A DNA stretch of 64,000 nt from positions 310,001-374,000 of IMG/VR virus record IMGVR_UViG_3300028840_002431. One strand, given 5' to 3'. The notes beneath the pieces are model-generated. The model did not search any database. It was not told the DNA's origin and worked only from the letters and a program-made list of their open reading frames with translations. The translations under genes were made by a program, and so were the position numbers. Below, one piece after another: positions 4,538-24,681 of this stretch (its first letter is position 1; every line of letters starts with the position of its first letter).

Positions 4538-4978
4538 TTATGTCACGTACAGGCTTCTAACGTCAGCTTCCGCGCCCTTCTTACGGTAGATGATATTAAC
4601 ACTGGCCGATTTGACACCAAGGCGTCTACAGATAGCGTCTATCACCACATGGGGCAGATACGTCCCACATGAGAAAACGTCCATGCTAAAGAAGCTCTGG
4701 AGCGGCCACGCATGAATACTGACGTGGCTTTTGTTGATCACACAAAAGCTCGTGATCCCGCCCTCGTCATGGAACTCCCCGCTCTCCCGAGACCGACGTA
4801 GGATTCCAGGATCGAGCGGCACTTCTACGAACTCAGGCCCGGCTAGAATCTTAGCGTCCAGGATCTTGATCACACTCTCAAAAAGCGCTGTTAGCTTGTC
4901 CTTCTCGAAGACAGACGGGTCCTTAACATAAGCGTCCAGGGTGACGTGTATACCGGCACTTTGGATTGGCGGAGCCAT
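4538..4978 (-). CDS. divergent pyruvoyl-dependent AdoMet decarboxylase-family protein
   Basis: GIHVTLD, GGITSFCVINK-SHVSIHAWP and MDVFSCG match the class 1B AdoMetDC pattern, with K instead of E before the Ser. Confidence 0.8.
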   Translation of the reverse strand: MAPPIQSAGIHVTLDAYVKDPSVFEKDKLTALFESVIKILDAKILAGPEFVEVPLDPGILRRSRESGEFHDEGGITSFCVINKSHVSIHAWPLQSFFSMDVFSCGTYLPHVVIDAICRRLGVKSASVNIIYRKKGAEADVRSLYVT

Positions 4979-4993
4979 CTGACATAACCGATC

Positions 4994-5638
4994 CTAAAAA
5001 GCAAAATAAATGGAAACAAACGGGTTGGACCGCCAGCCGCTCCACGTGATGGAGTACCCGGCGTAAGCTCCGAAGTTTGTCGTGATGTCAAATCCCAGGC
5101 CACCACCCACGGACCGGACCCCAACGTACACATTCAGATTGAACCACTGGACATAGAACGGCTCGATGAGAATACCGCCGTCCAGGGTCTTGTGGAACAC
5201 GTCAACTTCGTCGCTGAAAATATCGGCCACGAGAAGGCCAAAGGTCGCCTTAGGCCGGAAGCGGAAACCCCACGTCGGCTCGACCCGCTGGGCTACCTGT
5301 AGCTGGACCTCCGATTTGGCGTCGATTTGATAGTTGCACCAGTCGATGTGCAGTTCGTATGGCTTCGGGCCGGTACCAGAACCGTAAACACGTCCCTCCC
5401 GATCAACCACGATGTTGACGGAGTCTGCGGTGATCTTGGGGGCCGTCTCCGACCGGCACTTGTGCCACTCGGCAAGTTGAATAAATACCTCCAAGTCAGC
5501 TTTACCGACGCACGTCCCATCAGGGCACGCGGGCGGCTCAGGGGCTACAGGAGGCTCCGTGGGGGTCTCTTCGGCCGGTTGGGCGGCGGCCGTGACCGGC
5601 GCAAGCAACAGGGTCAGGAGTAATAGCCGCCACATCAC
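4994..5638 (-). CDS. secreted protein with C-terminal amphipathic beta-strands (outer-membrane beta protein, spanin-like candidate)
   Basis: Signal peptide MWRLLLLTLLLAPVTAAA, Pro-rich linker, four Cys, alternating hydrophobic strands, terminal SIYFAF. Confidence 0.55.
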   Translation of the reverse strand: MMWRLLLLTLLLAPVTAAAQPAEETPTEPPVAPEPPACPDGTCVGKADLEVFIQLAEWHKCRSETAPKITADSVNIVVDREGRVYGSGTGPKPYELHIDWCNYQIDAKSEVQLQVAQRVEPTWGFRFRPKATFGLLVADIFSDEVDVFHKTLDGGILIEPFYVQWFNLNVYVGVRSVGGGLGFDITTNFGAYAGYSITWSGWRSNPFVSIYFAF

Positions 5639-5653
5639 TGTTCACCGGTTCAG

Positions 5654-6241
5654 TTAGCTGGAATACCTACTCAGGAGGTCGTCAATCTTATTGGCCTCGA
5701 TGCCGGAATCGTCTTTGACCGTGACAGCGAACTGTTTGGGCTTCACGACCACGACCTTGTCCACATCCTTGGCCTTGACGCCGTCCGGCAGTTGGATCTC
5801 GACGGGCTTGGTCTCACCGGGCGGTGTGAACTTCACAGTATCCGGGTTTGAGAAGATGCCGGGCTTCTCTATCGGGACCACGACAGCCTGGGTCATCCCC
5901 TTGGAGTCCGCTTCACCGGGCTTGATTATCTTGCCGTCCTTGTCCACCCGGTCTTCCGGCACCGAATTAGCTGTGTCGATGGCCCGGTCGCCGGGTGTCT
6001 TCTTCCCAAACAGCTTGCCCAGAATACCGCCGACCTGGATGTTCTTCACACCCAACACTATTAAAAGGATGGCCACGGCCACGACAACCAGTGCCACACC
6101 GGGTGCCACGAGTACCCTGGACAGCCACTTGAGAATGGCCATGGTCTTGTCCTTCACAGTCGCCCAGAACGAGGGTTCCGGAGGGTCCGACGGAGGAGGT
6201 GGGATCGCTGGATTATTTGGGGGCAGGGGTGTCTTCGGCAT
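5654..6241 (-). CDS. single-pass membrane protein (i-spanin-like candidate)
   Basis: Pro-rich N-terminus, one long hydrophobic segment (VLVAPGVALVVVAVAILLIVLGV), polar C-terminal domain. Confidence 0.55.
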   Translation of the reverse strand: MPKTPLPPNNPAIPPPPSDPPEPSFWATVKDKTMAILKWLSRVLVAPGVALVVVAVAILLIVLGVKNIQVGGILGKLFGKKTPGDRAIDTANSVPEDRVDKDGKIIKPGEADSKGMTQAVVVPIEKPGIFSNPDTVKFTPPGETKPVEIQLPDGVKAKDVDKVVVVKPKQFAVTVKDDSGIEANKIDDLLSRYSS

Positions 6242-6641
6242 CGTTGTCCTTGTCCGGTGGAGGAGGTGCTTGACTCGGATCTACACCGGGAAGGGTCAAA
6301 TCAATGCCTCTTTTCTTCGCGAGACCCTTGACCGTTTCATACCCCCAAACGGAAAGGCCGCCAGAAGCCGCGAAGTAGCACACAGAGGCCGCTACGCCCT
6401 CGACCCCAGGCTCTGGGTTCTGCCAGAAAGCGCCCAAAAGACCGCCGAAAAAAATCGGTTGCAACGCAAGGGTCTTACGGCCCCACCACCAAAACCACAC
6501 AGGCTTACGCTCCATGTGCGCTGTCTTGGTGAAGATGTTCTTCTTGATGGTCTGGCCGGTGATCATGAAAATCACGAAGCCAGCGAAGAACGGCCAGTGC
6601 GGAATTACATAGTTGTTAACAAACCCCGATACGTCTTCCAT
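6213..6641 (-). CDS. holin-like small membrane protein (about 3 TM)
   Basis: Three hydrophobic segments followed by YETVKGLAKKRG and a charged tail, typical of holin architecture. Confidence 0.55.
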   Translation of the reverse strand: MEDVSGFVNNYVIPHWPFFAGFVIFMITGQTIKKNIFTKTAHMERKPVWFWWWGRKTLALQPIFFGGLLGAFWQNPEPGVEGVAASVCYFAASGGLSVWGYETVKGLAKKRGIDLTLPGVDPSQAPPPPDKDNDAEDTPAPK

Positions 6642-6654
6642 ATAGTCCTCCCGC

Positions 6655-6933
6655 CTAGCTCTTAGGCGTATGCAAATCCTTCAGTTTCTGGACAAACTGC
6701 GGGCTGATTTTCTTCTCTTCGACAGGCGGGGGATTGTCATGAGCCGCTGGTCGTTCCAGAACCCCTTTCTCCCACTTCTCGATCTTCATCAATCGTTCGT
6801 GAAGTTGCTTCATCTGGTCCGGAGCAAGATCCGGCTGTGACAGGGAAGCCTTGATGCGCTCCTTCACGGGCTTGGCACCGCTCTTCCGTTGCTCAGGAGA
6901 GAGATCCAGATAGCTCATGCGAATGACCGGCAT
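6655..6933 (-). CDS. hypothetical protein
   Basis: 92-aa charged ORF filling the gap between adjacent genes on the same strand. Confidence 0.65.
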   Translation of the reverse strand: MPVIRMSYLDLSPEQRKSGAKPVKERIKASLSQPDLAPDQMKQLHERLMKIEKWEKGVLERPAAHDNPPPVEEKKISPQFVQKLKDLHTPKS

Positions 6934-6935
6934 TG

Positions 6936-9900
6936 TTACGCCTTTCTAGCTAGTTGGATGGTGGAGGGGTCGATGAGCAACTTGACGTGATCGCTGACCA
7001 TCGGGTGCCCCTCGATACGGTAGAGATCGGCCGCCGCATACCCCTCGCCAGCCCCGTTGGTGCCGATAAGGACCAGCCCAGGCTCAAGACCCGCCGCTGG
7101 CCGATTGACGTTTGTCAAAACGAGCAACATCAACTCATCCCCGGCCGAAACCTCGTTAGAACCCACGTTCGTGACAGTGTTACGAACCAGGAGCGCTCGA
7201 CCCTGAATGACGTTCACATGGTCTGTGTTAACGACCTGTAAAGAGTTCTGTAATGACACCGACGAACCAGGGTGTGACCCGTTACCCGTGAACACCGACC
7301 CACCACGAAGCACGCGGAAATTGGTGAGCAACGAGTAGTTGCCTTGCTCGCCGTCCACGTGGACCAGGACATCTCCCGGCGAACCAACGCCCGAAGACGA
7401 CGTGCTCAGTGGGATTTCCGCCTGTTCGACCTCACTGTTGGCCGCAAAGCCAGTCGAAGGACCGTTCGCCACGACATTCTCGTAAACGAGTGCTGCGGGT
7501 AGGAACCCGTACACCTGACCACGGAAGTCCTTGTCCCGGAACAGCGAACCTAACGGCAACCTCTCCGTGCATCCCACGTACTCCGTACCGACGTTGGTAG
7601 CGTCGGAGGGATCGAAGTTGCCAGGGAGAGAGTTGGGCCGGTCAGCGACCGCCGAAGACGGCGGGTAAACGGCCGGATCTTCGTAGGCCACGTCCTTGAA
7701 GTCGAGTTCGTCGGTCGTGGCGTCCGCCGAATAACGGCCCGTCCCAAGTGTTGTGGAGAAACCGGTTGAAGCCAGGATTTCTAACACCTTCTCGTTCGGC
7801 CGTGTCAGATTGTCCTGATCCAACTCCGTGGACACGATTTCATACGCTGTGCCCGAAGTTAGAGGACCCGGCGTGTACGGGATGTCAATGTAGTTGGTCT
7901 GACTGCCCCACGCATCGCCCTGGTATGGTGTGCGCGAGTAGTTGATCAGGATCTGATCAGCCTGTTCGGCCGGTCCAGGGAGAAGCCCAGCCGGGGTGGC
8001 TACGAACTCGTTGAGGTTCTGGCTCCGGTCCGAAAGATGAACGGTCCCGGTTCCAACATCCTCCCAACCGTTGAGGTTCGGGGATATCGCCTGGGGGCGT
8101 CTCATGACCAACCGGAATTCGGAGTCGAGATCGAAGGACCCTCTGTCGAATCCAAAAACAACAGCCTCGATCACGTAGTTGCCCGACGCGAAATCAGGGA
8201 TCGGCACAGGAGACTTGGATATATCGATCGCATTCGCGTTCAGAATGAAGGTGGAGTCCCCGTCATCGTCGATTTCGATCCACAAGGGCGCTCCGTCGCC
8301 GGGTTGCATGGTTTGACGAAGCAAGTTCACAGCCGTGCCAATTCCACCCGTCGCACGCTCGTTAGTGAAGGGGCTGTCGTTGGTTGTGTAGTCCGACGCC
8401 TCGTACACACCAAAGATACGAACCACACCGTAAAACGGAGGAAACTCCAAGCCCTCGCGACCCAACCCTCGCGTGTCGGTGAAGAACCGCATCCCGGCCC
8501 ATTCGTTACTGCCGGTTCCCGTGATGGCGGTGTTGTATGGAATGGGCGTAGAGGTCGGATCTACCTGACTGAATATACAATACTCGTTCGAGCCACCGCT
8601 GCCGTTGAAGTACGCCGCGTAGTTGCTCTGGGTCGGGGTCACGGTCCCCGGAAGGCTCCGGATCATGTAGTTGATACCGCTGGCAAAGGTAGTCCCGTCG
8701 GTGTGCCGTAAGGGTATATGAAGCTCTCCCCACCCAGGAACTAAGTGCCGGGGCAAGGATACGTATATGTTCTTCCAAGACGCCCCAGGCGCAGTCTCAC
8801 CACAAAACAGATTCAATGGGTCAGTTGTGGTCCACTTGGGGGTGGAGTTGTCCGCCTTGAGAAGAGGCATCACACCTTGCGCCTCATGTACAGTGAAAGT
8901 GACAGCACCTGCTTTGGCTCTGACAGACCGATCCACTTGGATCGAGGTGGCGGGGACAACGTTAGTTATAGTGTAACGGCCCGCCCCAACGTTGCCGCTG
9001 GCGATAATCAGGGCGTCTCCTGCCGCTGCCGTGCCAGTCACACCCATAGTTATAGTGTCGCTGTTATCACCTGAGAGCGTGCCCGTAGTGGGAGAGCCAG
9101 CCTTCGCAGTCGAAACCGGATTAGCCGCGTCCCCGTCAACCGTTAACGGGGTCGTGAAGTCCATGCGTCGAAACGGCGTGGCCATCACGGTCTTACTGCC
9201 CAGGTCCGCGTACATCTCGGATGTGACCGGGAGCAAGTTGTTAAAAGTGCTGGACCTGTACTTGCTCCACAGGGGTGCCCATCCAACACGTGCCTGAAGG
9301 TTGTTGTTGGGGATACCCCACTGTTGGGTAAGAAGATCCGCACCGGGATTGAGGTACGAAATGGAGTGTAAGGAATCAGGCCGACGAGACAGACCGCGTC
9401 CAGGTCCATACACAGCGTGTACCTTGATGTGTAACAAACGGGGCGAATCAGTGGTCGTTAATTGATCCGGGAAAGTGCCACCTAGCGTGATCGTGAGATC
9501 GTCCCCTGGTCCGGGCACCGCTGGTGTCACTGTGTACATCGAAGACGGCATAGCGTCCGTCTCCCCGTCGAAACGAAGCTCGACGGCCCCAGCGACACTA
9601 TCGTTCAGCCATCGGATCTGGTCCGTGGCACCGGCCTGTAAGCCGGTCTTGAGTTGGTTGACCGGTATTACGATGATATCGCCAGCCGTGAACTGGTTGG
9701 CCACAGTCTGGTTCGTAGTCTCGACCGTGATGTCTAACGACCACGAAACGTTGATCGCCACGCCTGGACCCGGAGGCACAACACCCGTGTTCGGCTGGCA
9801 TACGCACTCTATAGGCTGGACCGTAGCCGCATCAGAATAGACCATCCGGATATTGTCCGGAGCATCCAACTGTGTGACACCCAAGGACACCGCCGCCGAC

Positions 9901-11276
9901 TGGATGGCGTCCTGGTAGTGAACGAAGGAACCCTGAGGCCCCGCGCCGGATCTCTTCCAGTTGGCCCTGAGTTGGCCTCGTAGAAGCTTGTCGAGATTGG
10001 AACGGAGAAGGGTTGTGAAATCCATTCCGTTTGGATTAACCAAATGGCGGAGATCCAGAATGTCAGTGTTAGCAATCTGATCAGAAAACAACTCGTCAGG
10101 GCGTCCTGAAATAACCGTGATGGTCGAACCGGACAAATGACCCTGTGCCAAGGTTCCGTTCAGACCACGGGTCAGACCGCTGATTGTGGTCCCTGTGATC
10201 GACGAGTACGTCATGATCTCGTCGTTGATCTGAATCGTCACAGGGGTGGCCGGTGTGGTGGGCAACGGAATGTTGCTCGCGCTCACAAGGGTCGCCGTTG
10301 TGTCCGTGTCAGTGATGTCGGCGTCCAACGTGGGAACCGTCGAGAAGGTTTTAACACCAGTCCTATCAACAGCCGTGGGGTTACGGTCGAACGCGCCGTT
10401 CAGATTCTGAGACGGATTGCCATTCCATGAGACTGTGTTGCGACGAAAGATAACGGCGATAGGGACCGCGTACGAATAACCGTCTACTGATCCCAGATCG
10501 TTCTGAGTGCCGTCTCCCGCTCGCCAAAGGCCCGGATCTCCCAGAGCCTGTCGCATGTTGGTGAAAGTGTAAGAAGTTGGAGATGCAGCCGCGCCCTGAG
10601 CCTTCACCACCACCGGGTCAAACCCATCAGGATAGGTGGTCAGCCCGACCAGACCCTTCACAACTCGGATACGATATTGAAGCTGAACCCTTTGCTCGGT
10701 TTCAAAACCCAGAGCCGGATCAACTAGATCGTCGGCCAAGTAGCTCCAACCACCTTCTACGTTACCATAACGGTAAATCGCGCTGGCCGAAGGCTTGTTT
10801 GTGGTCGATGGGTCAGGTTGAATCCTGGCCTTCCAAACTTCCAAAAAAGCGAAGTCGATGCGAAAGTCCCCGGAGTTCTCGGGAGGCGGGTCCAACGCGA
10901 TAACGTTGGTCGTATCTGTGTCGTTTGGAGATCCAGGAGGAGTCCCTGTCCGTGTCCCCGTGACCGGAATGAGCCAACCATTGACGTTGGCCCACATGAC
11001 GGACTTCTGCTCGCCTGACTTTTGCGGGCCGAATTTGAACCAGTTAGACCAGTTCGCGTCCGTGATGAAGTCAGCCTGAGGGTTAGTCTCGTTCCCCAAA
11101 AAACCAGAAGGCATGTCGCGCAAAAGCGCTGATTGTACCGATCCGCTGGCCAGTTGCTGCATCAGGTTCAGGGCCGCGTCTGTCGGAGGCTTGCCTTCTT
11201 GCCAGATAGCAAGTTGATATAGGGTCTCGTCCGCTAGAAGAACCCTGGATACCCCAGAGCCAAAATTGTCTGTCAT
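6936..11276 (-). CDS. large virion tail/baseplate protein, DUF4815/DUF6519-like N-terminus
   Basis: 1446 aa, T/G/P/D-rich beta character; WQEGKPPTDAALNLMQ, FLEVW, RVQLQYRIRV and GDPGLW are shared with 29622..32195. Confidence 0.7.
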   Translation of the reverse strand: MTDNFGSGVSRVLLADETLYQLAIWQEGKPPTDAALNLMQQLASGSVQSALLRDMPSGFLGNETNPQADFITDANWSNWFKFGPQKSGEQKSVMWANVNGWLIPVTGTRTGTPPGSPNDTDTTNVIALDPPPENSGDFRIDFAFLEVWKARIQPDPSTTNKPSASAIYRYGNVEGGWSYLADDLVDPALGFETEQRVQLQYRIRVVKGLVGLTTYPDGFDPVVVKAQGAAASPTSYTFTNMRQALGDPGLWRAGDGTQNDLGSVDGYSYAVPIAVIFRRNTVSWNGNPSQNLNGAFDRNPTAVDRTGVKTFSTVPTLDADITDTDTTATLVSASNIPLPTTPATPVTIQINDEIMTYSSITGTTISGLTRGLNGTLAQGHLSGSTITVISGRPDELFSDQIANTDILDLRHLVNPNGMDFTTLLRSNLDKLLRGQLRANWKRSGAGPQGSFVHYQDAIQSAAVSLGVTQLDAPDNIRMVYSDAATVQPIECVCQPNTGVVPPGPGVAINVSWSLDITVETTNQTVANQFTAGDIIVIPVNQLKTGLQAGATDQIRWLNDSVAGAVELRFDGETDAMPSSMYTVTPAVPGPGDDLTITLGGTFPDQLTTTDSPRLLHIKVHAVYGPGRGLSRRPDSLHSISYLNPGADLLTQQWGIPNNNLQARVGWAPLWSKYRSSTFNNLLPVTSEMYADLGSKTVMATPFRRMDFTTPLTVDGDAANPVSTAKAGSPTTGTLSGDNSDTITMGVTGTAAAGDALIIASGNVGAGRYTITNVVPATSIQVDRSVRAKAGAVTFTVHEAQGVMPLLKADNSTPKWTTTDPLNLFCGETAPGASWKNIYVSLPRHLVPGWGELHIPLRHTDGTTFASGINYMIRSLPGTVTPTQSNYAAYFNGSGGSNEYCIFSQVDPTSTPIPYNTAITGTGSNEWAGMRFFTDTRGLGREGLEFPPFYGVVRIFGVYEASDYTTNDSPFTNERATGGIGTAVNLLRQTMQPGDGAPLWIEIDDDGDSTFILNANAIDISKSPVPIPDFASGNYVIEAVVFGFDRGSFDLDSEFRLVMRRPQAISPNLNGWEDVGTGTVHLSDRSQNLNEFVATPAGLLPGPAEQADQILINYSRTPYQGDAWGSQTNYIDIPYTPGPLTSGTAYEIVSTELDQDNLTRPNEKVLEILASTGFSTTLGTGRYSADATTDELDFKDVAYEDPAVYPPSSAVADRPNSLPGNFDPSDATNVGTEYVGCTERLPLGSLFRDKDFRGQVYGFLPAALVYENVVANGPSTGFAANSEVEQAEIPLSTSSSGVGSPGDVLVHVDGEQGNYSLLTNFRVLRGGSVFTGNGSHPGSSVSLQNSLQVVNTDHVNVIQGRALLVRNTVTNVGSNEVSAGDELMLLVLTNVNRPAAGLEPGLVLIGTNGAGEGYAAADLYRIEGHPMVSDHVKLLIDPSTIQLARKA

Positions 11277-11294: not shown

Positions 11295-11315
11295 GTGATC
11301 CCGGAAGTGATCCCG
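11295..11315. repeat. direct repeat GTGATCCCG x2 (12-nt period) in the divergent intergenic region
   Basis: Copies at 11295-11303 and 11307-11315. Confidence 0.6.
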
Positions 11316-18129: not shown

Positions 18130-18971
18130 GGGAACATCGACGGAATAGCTACGTAACCACCAACCGGTTTCTTGCATTTAGGACAACGCGCCCTCTTAGA
18201 GACTATAGTGTTGAACTCCCCGCATGTCTCACAGGAGTAGTTCCCTATAACATCCCACGTCAATCGAAAATGAGTGGGCAACGGCAACAACTCGAACACT
18301 TCTTGTCGAGAGAACATCCCCGCTAAGTATATTTCCGGCCCTATACGATGCGGTACAACATGCGTCCAATTCGGGTGTGAGAAAAGACGGGCACTGTTCA
18401 CCCAGTAAAAAGATCCGCTAAACATCCATACATTCTCAGGGACCGGTAGCCCAACCGAAGACATAGAACCAAGCATTTTCTCTGACGGTTTCCCCCAAAA
18501 AGAGCCGCACGCGGCATACTTCGTTAAAATAGATTCGATCTTACCCACGTCGTGCAAACACTCGTGGTACATCCTGTTTCGCAATTGCCGCAAAGCTATC
18601 ATGTGGTGTTCGAAGCTCTCGCAAGGGTACGACTCGATCTCTTCACGGCGTTGGGGGTGCGTCACACCTTTATCATGAGCGTAAAATATAGCCTCGTCGG
18701 GATTCGAGGACTTGAGCATCGACAGGATGTCTATGAACCCAGCCGCTTCGTGTTGGCCAGGGTGGTTTGGTAGCTCTATGTATTCCACGTCCCTAACCCC
18801 GAACTCTGCCTTTACGGCGTCCGCAGACTCCAAACCCTCTCCGGTTCGTACAACCATGAGCCGACGGTTGTTGAAGGCGTCCATATACCGGCGTAACCAT
18901 CTAAGGTTATCCCGCCAGACCTCCGCGCCAGACTCTAACGGAGCGCAATTGTACACAAGGTTACGCAGCAT
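18126..18971 (-). CDS. RgpF/rhamnan-synthesis-like putative glycosyltransferase with C-terminal Zn ribbon
   Basis: IFYAHDKGVT (HxKG) and FSGSFYW motifs; C-terminal CETC...CPKC. Confidence 0.55.
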   Translation of the reverse strand: MLRNLVYNCAPLESGAEVWRDNLRWLRRYMDAFNNRRLMVVRTGEGLESADAVKAEFGVRDVEYIELPNHPGQHEAAGFIDILSMLKSSNPDEAIFYAHDKGVTHPQRREEIESYPCESFEHHMIALRQLRNRMYHECLHDVGKIESILTKYAACGSFWGKPSEKMLGSMSSVGLPVPENVWMFSGSFYWVNSARLFSHPNWTHVVPHRIGPEIYLAGMFSRQEVFELLPLPTHFRLTWDVIGNYSCETCGEFNTIVSKRARCPKCKKPVGGYVAIPSMFP

Positions 18972-20310
18972 CCTCGTCCTCGTAGTACACCTTGTTCTTT
19001 TCTTGCGGATCTACGATGGTATCGCCCACAGGGCTGTGTAACGTGCCTGTGTGATACTTTAGCCCTATATGAGGCAGCCAGAGCTTCACCCCTTCTTCAC
19101 ACAGGCCCTCGTACGGAACGATCTCAACTTCGGCTCCGTTGGCCTTGAGTTCCGTAATGTTCCTAACGAGGGTCCTATTGCGCGACCCAAGCATCGAGCC
19201 TAAGTCGTTCGTGAAACCATGTTTTTTAATGGCCGACCTCATAGCCGCGATAGGTTCTCTGATCATGACAACACCTGTTATATGGGAGTATCCGGCTCGA
19301 CGTAGGCCGCCCACCCATCCGACAATATTGCCGTGTTGGACCATGACAAACGGCTCGCCTTTGGACACTAGGATTTCTTCTTCTCTCTGTGGTTGCTCGT
19401 CGCCATGAAACCCAATGCAACCGCTTCTGAGCAATATAGAGGCCATCAGCCTATTCCCGCTGGCGACCGGACCGCACACCAGATACGCCGCGTGGATCAA
19501 ACCATGATCACGGAACTCGATAGGTTCTAGCCAGTCATAGCCAAACGGGTGCCACCACATCACCTCACCAGCGAGATGAGGATAGTGTCTTGGTTTTATG
19601 GCAGTCTTCGACAAGATCGACGGGCCGTCCGTAATCCGTTCACAGAAAAAGCTGCCCAAATCGGCCGCGCCGACGATATTGACATAGTGGGTAGACATCA
19701 GCTTCTGCATGATGGGCCAGAAGCGTTTGATGTCGTGATACTCGCCCGCCATGAACCGGATTCTCTTGAGCGTCTTCTCAGACGCAGACCCCAGAAAACT
19801 ACACTCCGCCCCCTCACTATCTGTCTTTAAATAATCTAGCTCCTCTCCCTCGTTCACTATGTCGTTCAACGCCTCTTCCAGAGTTTTGCACGCCACGGTG
19901 TCCGCCAGTTCTTTGTGGTTTCCCCCACTGGCTACCCCGGCTGGCGCGATGAAAGAGCCGCCTTCGTACCCAGGACCGCCATCCGGTAAGCCTAGGTACA
20001 CATGTAAGGGGCCTTGACCCCCTCGCGGAACCTCTCCAAAATCATCCTGGTACAAATGTGCCGCTGTCACAGCCTCTGAGCGGATCTGTACCTGTTTGAG
20101 ACCTTGCGTTTTGGACCGCGCCTTTTGCGCGTATCTCTCTACTGGTTCATAAGACACGATACGTGCTTCTGGAAAGCATTTCGCCATCTCGATGGTGATA
20201 TCACCGACGTTCGCACCCACCTCTAAAATGGTCCTGATAGGCGGCCCTTTCTGTGCGTCTACGAACCGTCGGATCGTGTAATATTTGTAACAGGCATTGC
20301 CTTCCATCAC
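18961..20310 (-). CDS. fusion: FkbM-family methyltransferase plus sulfotransferase-like domain
   Basis: LEVGANVG, YEP, LKTDSEGAE, GEYH (FkbM); then VCGPVASGNRLM, IREPIAAMRS, VPYEGL (5'PSB, 3'PB and YEDL-like motifs). Confidence 0.75.
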   Translation of the reverse strand: MMEGNACYKYYTIRRFVDAQKGPPIRTILEVGANVGDITIEMAKCFPEARIVSYEPVERYAQKARSKTQGLKQVQIRSEAVTAAHLYQDDFGEVPRGGQGPLHVYLGLPDGGPGYEGGSFIAPAGVASGGNHKELADTVACKTLEEALNDIVNEGEELDYLKTDSEGAECSFLGSASEKTLKRIRFMAGEYHDIKRFWPIMQKLMSTHYVNIVGAADLGSFFCERITDGPSILSKTAIKPRHYPHLAGEVMWWHPFGYDWLEPIEFRDHGLIHAAYLVCGPVASGNRLMASILLRSGCIGFHGDEQPQREEEILVSKGEPFVMVQHGNIVGWVGGLRRAGYSHITGVVMIREPIAAMRSAIKKHGFTNDLGSMLGSRNRTLVRNITELKANGAEVEIVPYEGLCEEGVKLWLPHIGLKYHTGTLHSPVGDTIVDPQEKNKVYYEDEDAA

Positions 20311-21050
20311 TTACCCCACTTAAATCTGTCTTCTACGTCCCAACGAATATGATCTTCTACCAACTGTTGGGGAGAAAGAGTCTTGATGTTACCCACCATG
20401 TGCTCAAACTTATAATCCCCCCATGTGTAGGTGACACGACCATCCGTCGCCACACAGATGCTCTTACCGCCTCCGTAGACCGGGTCCCACTTATACAAGG
20501 GGCGCGATGCTTGGTACGTTATGTTAGGGGCCGTTATCTCAAAACCGCGCCAGTCGTCCGAAAAAGATACGACATGGATGTTGTCAAATTCAGCGTGCCG
20601 ATCGAGCAGGTTCAAAAGGTTAGCTTTAGCGGTTGGGTAGTGGTCCGTTCGAGTTCGACGGGCGTATTCTTCTTCCCCTGTCTCGAACATGCTAAACCAT
20701 ACCCGACGTAAGCCGATGTTTTTAAGTTCGGTCAACCGGGCGTCGTTGAGCAAGACTCCGTTGGTACAAAGCCAGACTCTGGTGTTGGGCAACGCGCACA
20801 CACGTTTTAAATAGGCGTCTAGCCCTTTGAACAACAACGGTTCCCCGGCGACGTGTGGGTAGAACCAGAAGGTACAGTCGGGGTTCGCGTGTAACAATTG
20901 CACCACCGCGTCCATGGTCTCCTGGTCCACAAACGGGGGCCGGTCAACTTTTTCCTCCATCCCGCCCACGCACATGGAACACCGGTTCTGACAGTGAGTG
21001 GTAACTTCACTGTAAAGCAACGCTACTCTTGCATCGCAGGTTTCGGTCAC
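20307..21050 (-). CDS. radical SAM protein
   Basis: EVTTHCQNRCSMC (CxxxCxxC), GEPLL, TNGVLL. Confidence 0.9.
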   Translation of the reverse strand: MTETCDARVALLYSEVTTHCQNRCSMCVGGMEEKVDRPPFVDQETMDAVVQLLHANPDCTFWFYPHVAGEPLLFKGLDAYLKRVCALPNTRVWLCTNGVLLNDARLTELKNIGLRRVWFSMFETGEEEYARRTRTDHYPTAKANLLNLLDRHAEFDNIHVVSFSDDWRGFEITAPNITYQASRPLYKWDPVYGGGKSICVATDGRVTYTWGDYKFEHMVGNIKTLSPQQLVEDHIRWDVEDRFKWGK

Positions 21051-21075
21051 AGCACCGCCTATAGGCTAGATTTCT

Positions 21076-21107
21076 CTACGCCAGAATAGCTCCCACCTAC
21101 ACCAGAA
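21076..21107 (-). promoter_or_regulatory. tandem TTCTGGYGTAG motif (21-nt period) upstream of the glycan operon
   Basis: Plus-strand CTACGCCAGAA at 21076-21086 and CTACACCAGAA at 21097-21107, in an intergenic gap. Confidence 0.5.
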
Positions 21108-21115
21108 ACGGGAGA

Positions 21116-21544
21116 CTACGAGTAGTTCGCACCCAGGAGCGTCAAATAAATATCGGTGCCGTCCGAAAAATATTCGATGAGATCAATGGCGTTGATCGAA
21201 GCGGTGATAACATGAGGTGATCCACCGGGCCATTTCACCGAACCGGGGCCTGAGTAAGCCAGTGTGCCGGGCGTGGTCGGTGCTTGCGTGACCTTGATAA
21301 TACCCCGTTGGGCCGTCCGTAGACCACCAACGTTGGTGAAAGAAAGAGTCTCCGCACCGCTGTTGGAGAGCACCAGTTCGATGTCCGTGGCGTCCCGCAT
21401 GTCGTAGGTGAAAGTGCTTCCCGACACTGTGAGAGTCGCCATAACACGCTGAAGAATGGCAACCGCCGCGTTAGGGGCCGCCCCACGCGGAACTTCACCA
21501 GAAGCAAGTTGCGCTGCCGTCGCTACCGAAAATCGCCTAGCCAT
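21116..21544 (-). CDS. small phage tail-fibre-associated beta-sandwich protein
   Basis: LSFTNV...GIIKVTQ...VKWPGG.P...AIDLIEYFSDGT pattern, seen in phage fibre-tip domains. Confidence 0.6.
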   Translation of the reverse strand: MARRFSVATAAQLASGEVPRGAAPNAAVAILQRVMATLTVSGSTFTYDMRDATDIELVLSNSGAETLSFTNVGGLRTAQRGIIKVTQAPTTPGTLAYSGPGSVKWPGGSPHVITASINAIDLIEYFSDGTDIYLTLLGANYS

Positions 21545-24209
21545 GTTCGCTTACCTCCATCTGGCAACGCCACTCAATCGTTTTACTTGCCTCGCCAGTG
21601 ACCTGAACTTGAATATCTTGGCTACTGATATTGAACGTCACATCCCAGGCTGCCTGATCCTCGTAGCTGATCACGAAGTTCTCGTCCTTGCTCGTGACAA
21701 CACTGCCGCTACTCCGCTCGAACAGGGCCTCGACCACATACTTGGCGGAGTCCCCGACGGTCCCCACACCAGCACTCTGACGCGCAAATACCGTAACCTT
21801 CATGGAGATTGCCTTGGAGTCGGCAAGCGTCGAGTAGGTAACGATCGTGTTAGCGCCAGCACCAGTTGTTTGGAGCGTGGCGTCGCCAAGAGTGTCGCCG
21901 TTTCCTCCAACATTCTGCCACGCGGTGCCATTGTGGAGCCGAACATGGCCGACACCAGCCGAGTGGCTGGCGTTCGTCGTGATGATATCGCCACTAACAC
22001 CGGAAGAAGGATCAGCGTCCTGTGGTTGTATATGAAGTGCTGAGCGTACCGGAGAACCGCCCGTGTCTCCGTGGGCTTCAACACCGTAGCCGCCAGCACC
22101 GCCCGTGCCTTTGACACCTGTCCCGCCAGCACCGGAACCGTCGCCAGCACCGCCTTGTCCTTTGACGCCGATACCGCCGTTCTGGTTACTGGCAGCCGCG
22201 CCGTCACCAGCATTACCGACTACGCCAGTGCCACCATCACCGCTGTCATTATCAGCACCTGTGCCTTCAACTCCATCGCCACCCTTATTTGTACCAAACG
22301 TTGACCCGCCGCCACCTATGAACCAACCGCCAAGACCGCCGTTAGGACCACCTGTCCCACCAACACCAATAGCGCTCGAAGAAGAGGTAGCGACATTACC
22401 AAGGCCCATTACGCCGAAACCGAATTGATCTGTGCCTTCGGTTTCTCCAAGAACTCCTACGGAGTAGTTGGGAGAACCACCGGCATCTTCTGACACTCCG
22501 TGGATAGCGCCTACAGATCCCGCAAGAACGAGAGCGGGCGCAACACCAGAACCGGCACTAGGTGTCTTACCAACGACGCCAAGGCCGTTTGTGCCACCCC
22601 CCGTCCCGGTCACACCCGCACCACTTACTCCGGTACCCGTCGCGGCTGCACCTGTTCCAACAACGCCGGTACCACCGTCATTGTTGCCCGTACCAGAGGC
22701 GTTGGAGCCGATACCTTCGACGCCGGTACCGCCATCGTTATCACCGGTAGGAGTCCCGCCAGTACCCTTAACTCCTATGCCAGCACCGTTGCCACCGTAG
22801 CCATGGACACCCGGACCGGCGGAGCTGCCGCCAGTCCCTCGAACACCTGCGTGTGTCCCGGCACCAGCGCCGGTAATACCTATGTCGCCCGACGAAATTG
22901 CTGTCACAGCAACGTTGTTAGTAGACGTTGCGTAGACGCCATAGTGACCCGTACTAGCCCCATGGACTCCGATTCCGGTTGTGCCGGTGCCCTTAACACC
23001 AGTACCGCCTCCGCCGCCTACGCCCTCGACGCCGGTACCGTTGCCGGAAGCACCGCCTTCGCCATACACACCTTGAGAGGCCGGGGTGGGGACGGGTGTT
23101 AGAAAGTCTCCACCACCAATGACACCAATGCCGTTAGTACTGCCACCTCTGCCAGAAACGCCGGGTCCAGTGCCCGCACCGGAGCCTCGAACGCCTCCCG
23201 CTCCGGAGGCAGTACCCTCACCGTGAACACCGAAGCTCGACGCCGAAAAAGTGAACCCCCGGACGCCATACGTCAGCGACGAAGTCCCATCAACACCATA
23301 GTGGTTAGTGGATTCTCCTCTAACACCCTGTGCCGATGAGCCTACTCCCTTAATCGCGATACCTGATCCGGTGCCAATACCTTCAACACCAATGCCGTGA
23401 GGAGCACCGCCCGTGCCTTTGACACCCGTTCCGGTAGATGTGCCGCCCGTACCCTCAACACCGACCCCGGAACCAGCGCCCGTACCTTTGACACCAATGC
23501 CGTTAGAAGCACCGCCCGTGCCTTTGACACCAATACCGGTGCCAGCGCCTTGGCCTTCAACACCAATGCCGCCAGATGCCCCACCTAAACCATAAACACC
23601 CTGTCCGCCAGAGATCACTGGGACCGGTTGTTGGTCGCCAACGAACATACCACCGACACCGTTAGCACCGCCTCCGATACCGCGTACTCCCTGTAAACTA
23701 CTGCTTGCCCCAGCGGTCCCCACAATACCGGTCCCGGTCTCAGAATGCCCCTGCATCCCGGTTCCGGAGTTAGACTCTCCACGGACGCCTACCGATGTGG
23801 TGGAAACACCCCAAACACCGAAACTATCGGTGGCCGTGCCTTTGACACCCTTACCGGTAGTACCCCCGGCGACCCCTAAAACACCAATGCCGCCGACATC
23901 GCCGCCCGTGCCTTTGATCCCCTCCGAACTACCACCACTACCGCCCGTGCCCTCAACGGCTATTTCACCCACGCTGGGTGTGAAGGTCTGTTTCCGCGTC
24001 CAGGTGTTAGGAACGTTTAACTGCACACCGCCGCCGCCAGCGTCCTGCCACTCGTAAGTTGTGGCGCTGGTCGCGGTCGGAACCTGACCCACTGTGGGGG
24101 GAGCGGCTGCGGCGCTAGATACCGGATCTCCGGTAGTAGCTAACTCCAAGGCTCCGAACTGACCGGGTGCCGGTTTGATCTTGCTTGCTGAGTTATAGCG
24201 ATCGACCAT
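21537..24209 (-). CDS. Gly-rich tail fibre protein
   Basis: NTWTRKQTF, many GxGVxGxG repeats, C-terminal beta domain ending VTGEASKTIEWRC. Confidence 0.7.
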   Translation of the reverse strand: MVDRYNSASKIKPAPGQFGALELATTGDPVSSAAAAPPTVGQVPTATSATTYEWQDAGGGGVQLNVPNTWTRKQTFTPSVGEIAVEGTGGSGGSSEGIKGTGGDVGGIGVLGVAGGTTGKGVKGTATDSFGVWGVSTTSVGVRGESNSGTGMQGHSETGTGIVGTAGASSSLQGVRGIGGGANGVGGMFVGDQQPVPVISGGQGVYGLGGASGGIGVEGQGAGTGIGVKGTGGASNGIGVKGTGAGSGVGVEGTGGTSTGTGVKGTGGAPHGIGVEGIGTGSGIAIKGVGSSAQGVRGESTNHYGVDGTSSLTYGVRGFTFSASSFGVHGEGTASGAGGVRGSGAGTGPGVSGRGGSTNGIGVIGGGDFLTPVPTPASQGVYGEGGASGNGTGVEGVGGGGGTGVKGTGTTGIGVHGASTGHYGVYATSTNNVAVTAISSGDIGITGAGAGTHAGVRGTGGSSAGPGVHGYGGNGAGIGVKGTGGTPTGDNDGGTGVEGIGSNASGTGNNDGGTGVVGTGAAATGTGVSGAGVTGTGGGTNGLGVVGKTPSAGSGVAPALVLAGSVGAIHGVSEDAGGSPNYSVGVLGETEGTDQFGFGVMGLGNVATSSSSAIGVGGTGGPNGGLGGWFIGGGGSTFGTNKGGDGVEGTGADNDSGDGGTGVVGNAGDGAAASNQNGGIGVKGQGGAGDGSGAGGTGVKGTGGAGGYGVEAHGDTGGSPVRSALHIQPQDADPSSGVSGDIITTNASHSAGVGHVRLHNGTAWQNVGGNGDTLGDATLQTTGAGANTIVTYSTLADSKAISMKVTVFARQSAGVGTVGDSAKYVVEALFERSSGSVVTSKDENFVISYEDQAAWDVTFNISSQDIQVQVTGEASKTIEWRCQMEVSEHG

Positions 24210-24211
24210 TG

Positions 24212-24242
24212 TTTATCACTCCCACACTTGGGAAATGATAAA
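24212..24242 (-). promoter_or_regulatory. stem-loop covering the SD of the fibre gene
   Basis: mRNA reads UUUAUCA-UU-UCCCA-AGUG-UGGGA-G-UGAUAAA-CA-AUG. Confidence 0.65.
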
Positions 24243-24252
24243 TGGATCTCCG

Positions 24253-24681
24253 CTACTTAAGACGCGGCCGGAACCGGCACGGGGCGTCCGAGAGAGACCT
24301 CCTAACATGGTCCTGTAGTTGCATCGCCATTTGGGCCTTCAAAAGGCCACGATCAACGCGAATCATCTCGTACCCGGTCGCCTGGAGTCCCACCAAAATA
24401 ACCTCATGGGCCGCGTCTGGCTCACCCTGGCCGCAAGTATAAAAGTCTACCGTGGCGTACCCGTGCTCTGGCCATGTGTGGACGGAGAGGTGCGACTCCT
24501 CAATGACCACGACGCCGGTCACTCCCTGAGGCTCGAAAGGGCGGAATATGGAATCTACAATTCGGGTGTTAGCCGCGTAAGCCGCCCGCATGAGGAGCGT
24601 TTGTATCTCTGACACATCGTCGAGTATAGATTGATTGCACCCCCAGTATTCAACCAAGAGATGTCTACCCCGTGTGTCCAA
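24253..24681 (-). CDS. speD: S-adenosylmethionine decarboxylase proenzyme (class 1B)
   Basis: GRHLLVE, FEPQGVTGVVVIEE-SHLSVHTWPEHGYATVDFYTCG; TTG start with GGAG SD. Confidence 0.92.
   Translation of the reverse strand: MDTRGRHLLVEYWGCNQSILDDVSEIQTLLMRAAYAANTRIVDSIFRPFEPQGVTGVVVIEESHLSVHTWPEHGYATVDFYTCGQGEPDAAHEVILVGLQATGYEMIRVDRGLLKAQMAMQLQDHVRRSLSDAPCRFRPRLK

What the first reader, a model, noticed from the sequence alone, without database searches (positions are those of the whole stretch)
4538..24681. Two different AdoMet-decarboxylase homologues embedded among structural and lysis genes
Seen: a canonical SpeD (24253..24681) between the fibre genes and a divergent copy (4538..4978) after the lysis-like trio, with no aminopropyltransferase in the window. 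With five other SAM-using domains, this 20-kb span is unusually SAM-centred. Inference, three options: a two-enzyme polyamine precursor module (dcSAM plus putrescine/agmatine); SAM depletion against SAM-dependent restriction or BREX, analogous to T3 SAMase; or dcSAM supply to a methyltransferase-fold enzyme for aminopropylation of glycan or DNA.
Basis: partly seen in the sequence, partly recalled or inferred. Interest (0 to 1): 0.65.

Follow-up and report, generated by a model that had tools for sequence, protein, structure and literature searches.

The report
Jumbo phage SpeD plus arginine-decarboxylase-like paralogue
A 416-kb marine-sediment phage carries one ordinary S-adenosylmethionine decarboxylase and one diverged copy that has lost the SAM-binding residues and most likely decarboxylates arginine, so the pair would feed both precursors of spermidine to host enzymes; this extends a known kind of viral polyamine metabolism and is not a new system.

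Summary
Both ORFs are real AdoMetDC-fold genes at the stated coordinates, and they are the only two in the 416.5-kb phage record.

**Window 24253-24681(-)** is a canonical class 1b SpeD. It passes the NCBIfam equivalog cut-off and keeps Ser/His/Cys and both SAM-binding glutamates. It clusters with biochemically validated phage AdoMetDCs.

**Window 4538-4978(-)** keeps the self-processing Ser/His/Cys, but both SAM-binding glutamates are replaced (Lys83, Leu93). It also has a DEGG-containing helical insertion. It belongs to a separate large clade:
- Most bacterial genomes sampled with this clade have no canonical SpeD and no strong SpeE.
- In four bacterial loci the gene sits next to agmatinase; in one organism it sits next to a homospermidine-synthase-type gene.

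This is the published signature of SpeD homologues turned into pyruvoyl arginine decarboxylases. I could not place the clade beside a characterised SpeDA sequence.

The diverged copy is conserved across 22 related jumbo-phage records. The canonical copy is accessory: 4 of 22, once in tandem with a 4-nt overlap. No phage in the group encodes SpeE or agmatinase above cut-off.

Best reading: dcSAM plus agmatine supply for host spermidine synthesis. SAM depletion and aminopropylation of glycan or DNA have no support. The five neighbouring SAM-using domains lie in a variable glycan-modification island and look incidental.

The parts
24253..24681 (-). Canonical class 1b S-adenosylmethionine decarboxylase proenzyme (SpeD), 142 aa, TTG start. 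Predicted pyruvoyl Ser63 (EES|H), His68, Cys83. Both SAM-binding glutamates are present (Glu62, Glu72 in HTWPE).
   Evidence: PF02675 123 bits and TIGR03330 131.9 bits, above the 75.65 cut-off. 100 bits to T. maritima AdoMetDC 1TLU over residues 3-112. 44-48% identity to cyanophage SpeD. Clusters with validated AdoMetDCs of S-PM2, phiYS40 and P2559S (validation in PMC9992855). GGAG 8 nt upstream of the TTG.
4538..4978 (-). Divergent AdoMetDC-fold proenzyme (clade I, SpeDA-like), 146 aa. Predicted pyruvoyl Ser84 (NKS|H), His89, Cys104, Pro92. The SAM-binding glutamates are replaced by Lys83 and Leu93. Clade-specific insertion at residues ~55-72, ending in the invariant Asp71-Glu72-Gly-Gly. Inferred L-arginine (less likely L-ornithine) decarboxylase.
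   Evidence: PF02675 58 bits but below the TIGR03330 cut-off. AF2 model pLDDT 95.3, with T. maritima AdoMetDC structures as best Foldseek matches (TMq 0.66, TMt 0.78-0.80). Family alignments A1/A2. Tree and residue counts. Bacterial kin next to agmatinase or SpeY.
11295..24681 (.). 13.4-kb variable island between two genes that are adjacent in relatives. It carries the canonical speD, an 890-aa protein, a tail-fibre-like 142-aa protein, the glycan/SAM cluster and a + strand 827-aa gene.
   Evidence: In L007, L008 and other relatives the homologue of 24701-25318 lies directly upstream of the homologue of 6936-11276. Domain content.
14253..21050 (-). Sugar-modification cluster, context only and not part of the polyamine module. 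GT4 glycosyltransferase 14253-15446; NAD epimerase/dehydratase 15447-16451; methyltransferase 16448-16912; Methyltransf_24 plus CmcI-like O-methyltransferase 16909-18177; Zn-ribbon protein 18126-18971; FkbM methyltransferase 18961-20310; radical SAM 20307-21050.
   Evidence: Pfam and NCBIfam scans.
3479..11276 (-). Conserved syntenic block that holds the divergent gene in this jumbo-phage lineage. It comprises the 1446-aa tail-like protein, four small ORFs (92, 142, 195, 214 aa; one with a signal peptide, one with a hydrophobic segment), the divergent decarboxylase, and a DnaJ-domain protein (3479-4510).
   Evidence: Same order in L004, L007, L008, L097, L098, L101, L104, L108. DnaJ PF00226. 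Weak tail phrogs. Hydropathy.

Best explanation
The phage encodes two pyruvoyl-dependent decarboxylases of the AdoMetDC fold with different substrates.

**The canonical copy (24253-24681)** self-cleaves at Ser63 and decarboxylates S-adenosylmethionine to dcSAM, the aminopropyl donor.

**The divergent copy (4538-4978)** also self-cleaves, at Ser84, but can no longer hold the adenosine moiety. It most likely decarboxylates L-arginine to agmatine (a SpeDA-type enzyme). L-ornithine to putrescine is the second choice.

**How the module would work.** The phage has no agmatinase, no agmatine deiminase pathway, no spermidine synthase and no homospermidine synthase. Its products must therefore be finished by host enzymes: SpeB or AguAB plus SpeE, or an agmatine aminopropyltransferase route. 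The effect would be to raise spermidine in the infected cell. This would suit a 416-kb phage that brings 52 tRNAs and a tmRNA and so invests heavily in translation.

**Shown:** fold, catalytic residues, loss of the SAM-binding glutamates, clade separation, genome contexts, and distribution among related phages.

**Inferred:** the actual substrates, self-processing, and dependence on host enzymes.
For: 1. **The canonical copy is a good AdoMetDC.**
   - It is above the equivalog cut-off and close to T. maritima AdoMetDC and to cyanophage SpeD.
   - In the tree it sits with S-PM2, phiYS40 and P2559S SpeD, which restored spermidine in E. coli ΔspeD (PMC9992855).

2. **The divergent copy has lost SAM binding but not catalysis.**
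   - AdoMetDC binds SAM through the Glu before the pyruvoyl Ser (contacts the base) and the Glu after HxxP (binds both ribose hydroxyls) (PMC1282579).
   - P0002 has both. P0001 has Lys83 and Leu93.
   - In its clade the first position is Thr or Lys in 106/106 sequences and the second is Leu in 88/106. Ser, His and Cys are kept.

3. **The clade is distinct.** A tree of 147 homologues splits this 'T/K-S-H...WPL + DEGG' clade from canonical 'E-S-H...WPE' proteins, with SH-like support 0.85.

4. **Bacterial genomes with the clade-I gene behave as the published logic predicts (25 sampled).**
   - 19 lack a second homologue.
   - Strong SpeE (174-194 bits) is found only beside canonical SpeD, in 4 genomes.
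   - Most have a single PF02784 hit, probably LysA.
   - 22 of 25 have an arginase-family gene.

5. **Direct gene neighbours point to agmatine and putrescine.**
   - In 4 loci the clade-I gene is next to a gene scoring as agmatinase. Three were scored against TIGR01230 at 200-207 bits (cut-off 174.3); the fourth is a 73%-identical homologue.
   - In one MAG (seen on two contigs) it sits directly upstream of a homospermidine biosynthesis protein, NF001980 at 558 bits.
   - These are the criteria and the clusters used to find SpeDA in PMC10407285.

6. **The two phage genes are linked in relatives.**
   - In one relative they are tandem and overlap by 4 nt (same record as G081).
   - Three others keep them 18-24 kb apart, as here.

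7. **Translation-related context in another phage sub-lineage.** There the clade-I gene lies beside peptide deformylase and a CCA-adding-enzyme-like gene.
Against: - No clade-I protein could be tied to a biochemically characterised SpeDA. I could not obtain those sequences, so ADC activity rests on context and residue logic only.
- Agmatinase or SpeY adjacency was seen in 5 organisms. Most Myxococcota loci have unrelated neighbours.
- PMC10407285 says the Pro after His-x-Trp is not conserved in SpeDA proteins, yet clade I mostly keeps it.
- The second glutamate is not universal even outside clade I (23/41).
- Neither this phage nor any of its 22 relatives encodes agmatinase. Agmatine is therefore useful only if the unknown host can convert it. 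An ornithine decarboxylase would not need that.
- The phage subclade has Lys rather than Thr before the Ser in several members, and could differ in specificity from the bacterial kin.
Confidence: 0.6

Rival explanations
1. The divergent copy is a pyruvoyl L-ornithine decarboxylase (SpeDC-like in function) that makes putrescine directly. The phage would then supply putrescine plus dcSAM and need only the host's SpeE.
For: The phage and all 22 relatives lack agmatinase and agmatine deiminase. PMC10407285 argues that an ODC integrates more easily after transfer because it needs no agmatine-converting enzyme. Five uncultured phage SpeD homologues were shown to be ODCs (PMC9992855).
Against: P0001 lacks the SpeDC signature. 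The SpeDC motif read from the paper's fusion-protein alignment is Q..(E)T-S....G-H-F...Y. P0001 has VINK-S-HVSI-H-AWP. tblastn of P0001 against 50,697 phage records finds only 12, all canonical-type or unannotated and below 36% identity. Bacterial kin sit next to agmatinase, which is pointless for an ODC.
Confidence: 0.15
2. Both proteins are plain AdoMetDCs, a redundant or differently regulated pair of ordinary auxiliary metabolic genes.
For: Both hit PF02675 and keep Ser/His/Cys and the Pro of HxWP. AdoMetDC is the commonest polyamine gene in phages (PMC9992855).
Against: Both SAM-contacting glutamates are lost in P0001 and throughout its clade. It scores below the TIGR03330 cut-off. Clade-I-only bacterial genomes lack a strong SpeE partner. 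In published cases of two SpeD homologues in one genome, one was always not an AdoMetDC (PMC10407285).
Confidence: 0.08
3. The decarboxylases feed a phage-specific modification rather than free polyamine pools. For example, agmatine and/or dcSAM could be used by the phage's SpeE/GAMT-like methyltransferase-fold protein (G000:C1:279070-279690) to make aminopropyl- or methyl-agmatine, or to decorate glycan or DNA.
For: The genome has a 206-aa protein whose best sequence match in the PDB is E. coli spermidine synthase (E=0.028). Its model aligns over 150-200 residues with spermidine and spermine synthases and best with guanidinoacetate N-methyltransferase (Z 13.3). Homologues lie 2-5.5 kb from the clade-I gene in three related loci. 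The canonical speD lies in an island with glycan-modifying SAM enzymes.
Against: PF01564 scores 17 bits, below cut-off, and generic methyltransferase models score equally. The family has GLGxG where aminopropyltransferases have GGGDG, so the Asp that selects dcSAM is absent (the role of that Asp is from my own knowledge). The three linked loci are one syntenic lineage, so they count as one event. In this genome the genes are 35 kb apart. In the tandem relative there is no SAM cluster nearby.
Confidence: 0.07
4. SAM depletion as counter-defence. The decarboxylases would drain SAM to disable SAM-dependent restriction or BREX, by analogy with T3 SAM lyase.
For: AdoMetDC consumes SAM. Counter-defence by SAM removal exists in T3 (own knowledge).
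Against: The divergent copy lacks the SAM-binding residues. The phage itself encodes at least five SAM-dependent domains next door. The pyruvoyl ADC/ODC homologues of this fold assayed in the two papers are slow (kcat about 0.003-0.9 per s). The Foldseek match to phage SAM lyase 6zm9 is weak (rank 37, TM 0.38). The conserved gene of the lineage is the non-SAM copy.
Confidence: 0.03
5. The divergent copy is a regulatory partner that forms a heterodimer with the canonical enzyme, like the trypanosomatid AdoMetDC/prozyme pair.
For: Class 1b enzymes are dimers with shared active sites (own knowledge). The two genes are translationally coupled in one relative. Foldseek lists the T. brucei prozyme heterodimer among distant matches.
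Against: The divergent copy keeps all catalytic residues. It occurs without any canonical partner in 18 of 22 related phage records, including complete ones, and in 19 of 25 bacterial genomes. No complex prediction was run.
Confidence: 0.03

Closest known systems
SpeDA: AdoMetDC/SpeD homologues neofunctionalised into pyruvoyl-dependent L-arginine decarboxylases (Li, Liang, Phillips & Michael, J Biol Chem 2023, PMC10407285; crenarchaeal precedent cited there)
   Same: - Class 1b AdoMetDC fold with Ser/His/Cys retained.
- Occurs as a second SpeD homologue beside a bona fide one, or alone without SpeE.
- Bacterial kin cluster with speB (agmatinase) and speY (homospermidine synthase).
- Genomes mostly lack a separate PLP ADC/ODC.
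   Different: - No clade-I member could be matched to a characterised SpeDA, so activity is untested.
- Clade I mostly keeps the Pro that the paper reports as not conserved in SpeDA.
- Clade I has a DEGG-containing helical insertion that the paper does not describe.
- The phage copy has Lys, not Thr, before the pyruvoyl Ser.
Phage-encoded AdoMetDC homologues (Li et al., PNAS 2023, PMC9992855): bona fide SpeD of S-PM2, phiYS40, phiN3, P2559S; pelagiphage HTVC201P ADC; freshwater phage ODCs
   Same: - Small PLP-independent polyamine enzymes carried by phages without the rest of the pathway.
- They rely on host enzymes.
- The canonical copy here is 44% identical to the validated S-PM2 SpeD over the aligned 65% of its length.
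   Different: - That survey found more than one polyamine enzyme in only one phage (AdoMetDC plus spermidine synthase).
- Here a bona fide-type SpeD and a neofunctionalised-type paralogue co-occur in one phage.
- The divergent copy has no detectable close relative among 50,697 deposited phage records.
Vampirovibrio chlorellavorus speD1/speD2-speE-speB cluster (PMC10407285)
   Same: Two SpeD homologues work together, one an AdoMetDC and one an ADC, giving dcSAM plus agmatine for spermidine.
   Different: The bacterium also encodes SpeE and SpeB in the cluster. The phage encodes neither.
SpeDC pyruvoyl ornithine decarboxylases (PMC10407285)
   Same: Same fold and the same kind of substrate shift. 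Thr before the pyruvoyl Ser, as in most of clade I.
   Different: The four diagnostic residues (Gln, Thr, Phe, Tyr) are not present together in P0001. SpeDC lacks the Trp-Pro after the His, which clade I keeps.

Membership tests
Class 1b AdoMetDC/SpeD (PF02675, TIGR03330) | Profile match above curated cut-offs | tested here: met
   For 24253-24681: PF02675 123 bits and TIGR03330 131.9 bits (cut-off 75.65). For 4538-4978 only the broad Pfam model is passed (58 bits); TIGR03330 gives 57.5 bits, below cut-off, so the equivalog test is NOT met for that copy.
Class 1b AdoMetDC/SpeD | Self-processing and catalytic residues (T. maritima Ser63, His68, Cys83) | tested here: met
   Both copies have them. 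P0002: S63, H68, C83. P0001: S84, H89, C104, with the same +5 and +20 spacing. Residue roles are from PMC10407285. Actual cleavage was not tested.
Class 1b AdoMetDC/SpeD | Two SAM-binding glutamates: the Glu preceding the pyruvoyl Ser (contacts the base) and the Glu after HxxP (binds the ribose hydroxyls) | tested here: not met
   This applies to 4538-4978, which has Lys83 and Leu93. Its clade has T/K in 106/106 and Leu in 88/106. The feature is met for 24253-24681 (Glu62, Glu72). Residue roles are from PMC1282579.
Class 1b AdoMetDC/SpeD | Obligatory partner spermidine synthase in the same genome | tested here: not met
   No PF01564 match over cut-off in the 416-kb record or in 22 related records. 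This is usual for phage speD, which uses host SpeE (PMC9992855). The record is 87% complete by CheckV.
SpeDA (pyruvoyl arginine decarboxylase derived from SpeD) | Anomalous SpeD homologue: second copy, or present without SpeE, in genomes lacking canonical ADC/ODC | tested here: met
   It is the second copy in this phage. In 25 bacterial genomes, 19 have the clade-I gene as their only homologue. Strong SpeE is found only next to canonical SpeD. PF02784 is mostly single copy. AAT-fold decarboxylases were not checked.
SpeDA | Gene clustering with agmatine-to-putrescine or homospermidine genes (speB, aguAB, speY) | tested here: met
   Met for bacterial kin. Agmatinase is adjacent in L045, L049, L050 and L051; three were scored against TIGR01230 at 200-207 bits (cut-off 174.3). 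SpeY-type NF001980 at 558 bits is adjacent in L005/L006. Not met in the phage itself, which has none of these genes.
SpeDA | Phylogenetic grouping with, or demonstrated activity like, characterised SpeDA enzymes | not testable with these tools
   Characterised sequences (for example WP_081459519, PIS27863, WP_119321511) could not be fetched. Searches gave no organism names or accessions that match them.
SpeDC (pyruvoyl ornithine decarboxylase) | Four diagnostic residues Gln, Thr, Phe, Tyr around the processing site | tested here: not met
   The SpeDC motif from the paper's Fig. S5 is VQLIETS-L.SGHF...Y.D.FSC. P0001 has CVINKS-HVSIHAWP...MDVFSC. Positions were inferred by me from the text and the fusion alignment, because the logo figure is not readable.
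Phage SAM lyase (T3 SAMase type) | SAM lyase fold | tested here: not met
   The Foldseek match to 6zm9 is only rank 37, with TM 0.38 and E=0.014. The top matches are AdoMetDC structures.
Aminopropyltransferase (SpeE) for the 206-aa protein at G000:C1:279070-279690 | PF01564 above cut-off, GGGDG loop with the dcSAM-selecting Asp, spermidine-synthase fold | tested here: inconclusive
   PF01564 scores 17 bits, below the 22.9 cut-off. The loop is GLGLG and is invariant in the family. The fold is a class-I methyltransferase. Spermidine and spermine synthases are among the longest alignments, but guanidinoacetate methyltransferase ranks first.

The most novel reading that the evidence does not exclude
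Clade I (T/K-S-H, WPL, DEGG insertion) is a separate, so far uncharacterised neofunctionalisation of AdoMetDC. Its substrate in the jumbo phages might not be plain arginine or ornithine. It may also act in concert with the phage's widespread short SpeE/GAMT-like methyltransferase-fold protein to make a modified polyamine, such as aminopropyl- or methyl-agmatine, that the host does not make. That would make it a phage-specific polyamine pathway rather than a booster of host spermidine.
Probability: 0.1. Interest if true: 0.7.

Novelty: new member of a known kind. Interest (0 to 1): 0.4.

Why it matters
**What it would add.** If the assignment holds, this is a phage lineage that carries both a bona fide AdoMetDC and an AdoMetDC-derived amino-acid decarboxylase. 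It would supply both halves of spermidine synthesis (aminopropyl donor and diamine precursor) from two tiny cofactor-independent proteins.

The 2023 survey of viral polyamine metabolism found multi-enzyme polyamine sets almost only in eukaryotic giant viruses, and in one phage (PMC9992855). This would extend such sets to jumbo phages. It would also fit that paper's suggestion that viruses with large translation gene sets need extra polyamine.

**Practical use.**
- A simple residue rule separates the two kinds of 'SpeD' annotation: the Glu before the pyruvoyl Ser and the Glu after HxWP are both lost, and a DEGG insertion is present.
- The rule flags a large clade as probably mis-annotated 'S-adenosylmethionine decarboxylase'. 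The profile search gave 745 representative clusters at E<=1e-10, though part of that count is canonical proteins. The GTDB scan found 274 matching stretches.

**Limits.** The finding does not open a long-standing question. The concept and the bacterial precedent are already published.

Tried and rejected
**Searches that found nothing**
- Near-identity search of the 23-kb span against deposited phages: no match.
- Whole-record searches for other polyamine genes were negative or below cut-off: speE, PLP ADC/ODC, arginase/agmatinase, deoxyhypusine/homospermidine synthase, agmatine deiminase, saccharopine-dehydrogenase-type CASDH/HSS.
- The record's one CN_hydrolase is nitrilase-like, not N-carbamoylputrescine amidase: TIGR03381 scores 27.8 bits against a cut-off of 410.
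- Neighbourhoods of Myxococcota clade-I genes hold no polyamine genes.

**Attempts to anchor clade I to a characterised SpeDA, all unsuccessful**
- The pattern scan of GTDB genomes with the narrow family found nothing.
- The wider scan named only MAGs.
- The class-level genome search returned no taxon names.
- The word search with the SpeY-linked bacterial member returned no named proteins.
- The cluster look-up returned no accessions.
- Paper supplements held no usable sequences apart from one fusion-protein alignment.
- The T. maritima complex paper and the AdoMetDC structural review were not held.

**The sub-threshold SpeE-like protein.** I examined it as a hidden aminopropyltransferase. 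The result was inconclusive, leaning to no.

**Not run**
- Complex prediction for a heterodimer, because I do not claim binding.
- Read laying. The run search found only DNA metagenomes (sediment, seawater) that may be the source of the record, so there was no expression evidence to gain.

**Housekeeping**
- Only table 11 was used.
- No spliced models were involved.


Full report
**What is there**

The window is bases 310001-374000 of a single 416,539-bp virus record. CheckV puts it at 87% complete, and it has no terminal repeats. GC content is 55%, and the record carries 52 tRNA genes and a tmRNA. Its DNA is found in sediment and seawater metagenomes.

Both match the AdoMetDC family PF02675 far beyond chance, at E=1.4e-15 and 7.5e-36. 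They are the only two such matches in the record and are about 20% identical to each other. Both have plausible ribosome-binding sites.

**The canonical copy (24253-24681, P0002)**

- It passes NCBI's equivalog model for class 1b AdoMetDC: 131.9 bits against a cut-off of 75.65.
- It aligns end to end with the T. maritima enzyme at 100 bits.
- It is 44-48% identical to cyanophage SpeD proteins.
- It has the EES|H processing site, with His at +5 and Cys at +20. These are the residues that PMC10407285 names as essential.
- In a tree of 147 homologues it groups with the SpeD proteins of phages S-PM2, phiYS40 and P2559S. PMC9992855 showed that these restore spermidine synthesis in E. coli ΔspeD.

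I take it to be a working AdoMetDC.

**The divergent copy (4538-4978, P0001)**

It passes only the broad Pfam model and falls below the equivalog cut-off. A confident AlphaFold model (pLDDT 95.3) has the T. maritima and Aquifex AdoMetDC structures as its best matches. The fold is therefore not in doubt. Ser84, His89 and Cys104 are in register with the catalytic triad, and the Pro of HxWP is kept.

What has changed is substrate binding. According to PMC1282579, SAM is held by two glutamates:
- the one just before the pyruvoyl serine, which contacts the base;
- the one at the end of the His strand, which binds both ribose hydroxyls.

In class 1b enzymes these are the Glu of E-S-H and the Glu of H-T-W-P-E. 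P0002 has both. P0001 has Lys83 and Leu93.

P0001 also has an insertion of about 15-20 residues before the cleavage strand. It forms a helix in the model and ends in an invariant Asp-Glu-Gly-Gly. I speculate that this acidic pair could bind a cationic side chain. This is inference only.

**A distinct clade**

- The word search found only 24 relatives of P0001, several on contigs of 137-323 kb.
- A tblastn of P0001 against 50,697 deposited phage genomes found 12 distant matches, all below 36% identity.
- The exhaustive profile search found 5,341 representative clusters at E<=1e-3 and 745 at E<=1e-10.
- The motif listing and tree of the best 150 plus controls show a clean split. Clade I holds 106 sequences with SH-like support 0.85. 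The residue before the serine is Thr or Lys in all of them, Leu follows Trp-Pro in 88, and nearly all have the DEGG motif. Outside the clade, 38 of 41 have Glu before the serine.
- P0001 does not carry the SpeDC (ornithine decarboxylase) signature that PMC10407285 gives as diagnostic, as far as I can read it from the text and the fusion-protein alignment.

**What clade I does in bacteria**

I applied the logic of PMC10407285: an anomalous SpeD without SpeE, a second SpeD in one genome, no canonical ADC/ODC, and clustering with speB or speY. A scan of GTDB species genomes found 274 clade-I-type stretches. Most are in Myxococcota and Planctomycetota.

In 25 of those genomes:
- 19 have the clade-I gene as their only AdoMetDC homologue;
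- strong spermidine synthase hits (174-194 bits) occur only in four genomes, each immediately beside a canonical SpeD, while the clade-I-only genomes have only partial, weaker PF01564 hits;
- most have a single PF02784 gene, which is probably LysA;
- 22 have an arginase-family gene.

In four loci that gene lies directly beside the clade-I gene. The three I scored pass the agmatinase equivalog at 200-207 bits (cut-off 174.3), and the fourth is a 73%-identical homologue. In another MAG the clade-I gene is immediately upstream of a homospermidine biosynthesis protein, NF001980 at 558 bits.

Homospermidine synthesis needs putrescine and no dcSAM. Agmatinase needs agmatine. This context points to arginine decarboxylation.

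Most Myxococcota loci, however, have unrelated neighbours. I also could not link any clade-I protein to one of the enzymes actually assayed in the paper. The assignment is therefore an inference, not a demonstrated membership.

**The pair in the phage lineage**

A scan of IMG/VR found 22 related loci, mostly on contigs of 280-412 kb. All 22 records carry the clade-I gene. Only four also carry a canonical SpeD:
- in two complete genomes and one fragment, the two genes are 18-24 kb apart, as in this window;
- in one record they are in tandem, and there the two ORFs overlap by 4 nt.

Two complete genomes have the clade-I gene alone. The diverged gene is thus the conserved one and the canonical gene is accessory.

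In this window the diverged gene sits in a conserved block: 1446-aa tail-like protein, four small ORFs, decarboxylase, DnaJ protein, then the SNF2 helicase gene just downstream of the block (1335-3158). The same order is found in many relatives.

The canonical gene lies at the edge of a 13.4-kb island (11295-24681), inserted between two genes that are adjacent in other relatives. That island also holds the GT4 glycosyltransferase, the sugar epimerase/dehydratase, three methyltransferase genes and the radical SAM gene. I see no evidence that the sugar cluster and speD work together.

None of the 23 phage records encodes agmatinase or a spermidine synthase above cut-off. This record also lacks deoxyhypusine/homospermidine synthase, agmatine deiminase and PLP ADC/ODC.

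In a different sub-lineage the clade-I gene lies beside peptide deformylase and a CCA-adding-enzyme-like gene. This fits a translation-support role.

**Mechanism proposed**

Both proenzymes would self-cleave to make a pyruvoyl group.
- One converts SAM to dcSAM.
- The other converts arginine to agmatine, or less likely ornithine to putrescine.

Host enzymes would then complete spermidine. This matches what PMC9992855 proposes for single phage SpeD, ADC or ODC genes, and matches the SpeD1/SpeD2 arrangement of Vampirovibrio chlorellavorus in PMC10407285.

Rivals, with my estimates:

| Rival | Estimate |
|---|---|
| Ornithine decarboxylase | 0.15 |
| Two plain AdoMetDCs | 0.08 |
| Phage-specific modification pathway using a SpeE/GAMT-like protein | 0.07 |
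| SAM depletion | 0.03 |
| Prozyme-like heterodimer | 0.03 |

**A side observation**

About 31 kb upstream of the window (G000:C1:279070-279690) lies a 206-aa protein. Its best PDB sequence match is E. coli spermidine synthase, at E=0.028. It belongs to a family of at least 183 clusters on phage-like contigs, and JGI labels some of them 'spermidine synthase'.

Its model is a class-I methyltransferase fold. The best match is guanidinoacetate N-methyltransferase, and the long alignments are to spermidine and spermine synthases. The glycine loop is GLGxG rather than GGGDG. By my own knowledge of aminopropyltransferases and putrescine N-methyltransferase, this argues against dcSAM use.

Homologues lie 2-5.5 kb from the clade-I gene in three loci of one sub-lineage. 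This leaves a small chance of a phage-specific agmatine-modifying pathway.

**Verdict**

The other two are not.
- The finding is a new member of a known kind: virus-encoded polyamine enzymes that include neofunctionalised SpeD homologues. The modestly new points are that a phage carries both types and that the diverged type is a conserved gene of a jumbo-phage lineage.

Only genetic code 11 was used.

Noticed in passing
G000:C1:279070-279690 (+), outside the window (= L003:1315-1935, P0174): A 206-aa SpeE/GAMT-like class-I methyltransferase-fold protein. It belongs to a large phage-associated family (at least 183 clusters) that JGI sometimes auto-names 'spermidine synthase'. The glycine loop is an invariant GLGxG, and 'VMSDT.ME..TN' and 'FDTIYFDIW' are conserved. 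Homologues lie 2-5.5 kb from the clade-I decarboxylase in L100, L105 and L118.
   Followed up: partly
window 11295-24681: A 13.4-kb variable island between two genes that are adjacent in relatives. It carries a sugar-modification cluster (GT4, epimerase/dehydratase, three methyltransferase genes including a CmcI/rhamnosyl-O-MT-like and an FkbM type, radical SAM), a tail-fibre-like 142-aa protein and an 890-aa protein with no family. This suggests methylated-glycan decoration linked to fibre or host-recognition genes.
   Followed up: partly
window 4994-6933 (-): Four small ORFs conserved in synteny upstream of the divergent decarboxylase, with no family match. The 214-aa one has a signal-peptide-like N-terminus, the 195-aa one has a strongly hydrophobic segment (34-75) and a Pro-rich N-terminus, and the 142-aa one is Trp/Phe-rich.
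   Followed up: partly
G000:C1:64058-93894, 209611-229594 and 87655-88405 (outside the window): 52 tRNA genes in two clusters and a tmRNA (tag ANDNAAPLAIAA), by ARAGORN. This is a large translation-related investment and is relevant to a polyamine role.
   Followed up: no
L004:15499-18363 (related phage) versus window 1335-3158: The SNF2-family helicase is 607 aa here but 954 aa in the relative. There the gene carries faint intein-splicing and clear LAGLIDADG_2 hits between the two helicase halves, so an intein is probably inserted in the relative's helicase.
   Followed up: no
P0004 (250 aa) and P0005 (179 aa), relatives of the divergent gene: In some relatives the gene call for the clade-I decarboxylase is extended at the C-terminus by a GIY-YIG domain (PF01541). 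This is probably a homing endonuclease inserted or fused just downstream.
   Followed up: no
G000:C1:298371-299141 (-) (= L010:1489-2274): A CN_hydrolase (nitrilase-superfamily) gene, also seen about 5 kb from the clade-I gene on a 31-kb relative contig. It does not match N-carbamoylputrescine amidase (27.8 bits against a cut-off of 410). Function unknown.
   Followed up: partly
L118:8304-14483, L100 and L105 (another jumbo-phage sub-lineage): Here the clade-I decarboxylase lies between a papain-like protease gene and a peptide deformylase gene. Nearby are a CCA-adding-enzyme-like (HD plus PolyA_pol) gene and a Ku homologue.
   Followed up: partly
G001-G025 (Myxococcota and Planctomycetota genomes): Many carry several long ORFs (600-1300 aa open frames) with partial Spermine_synth matches of 25-75 bits, unlinked to any SpeD. 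These are spermidine-synthase-like domains of unknown role.
   Followed up: no
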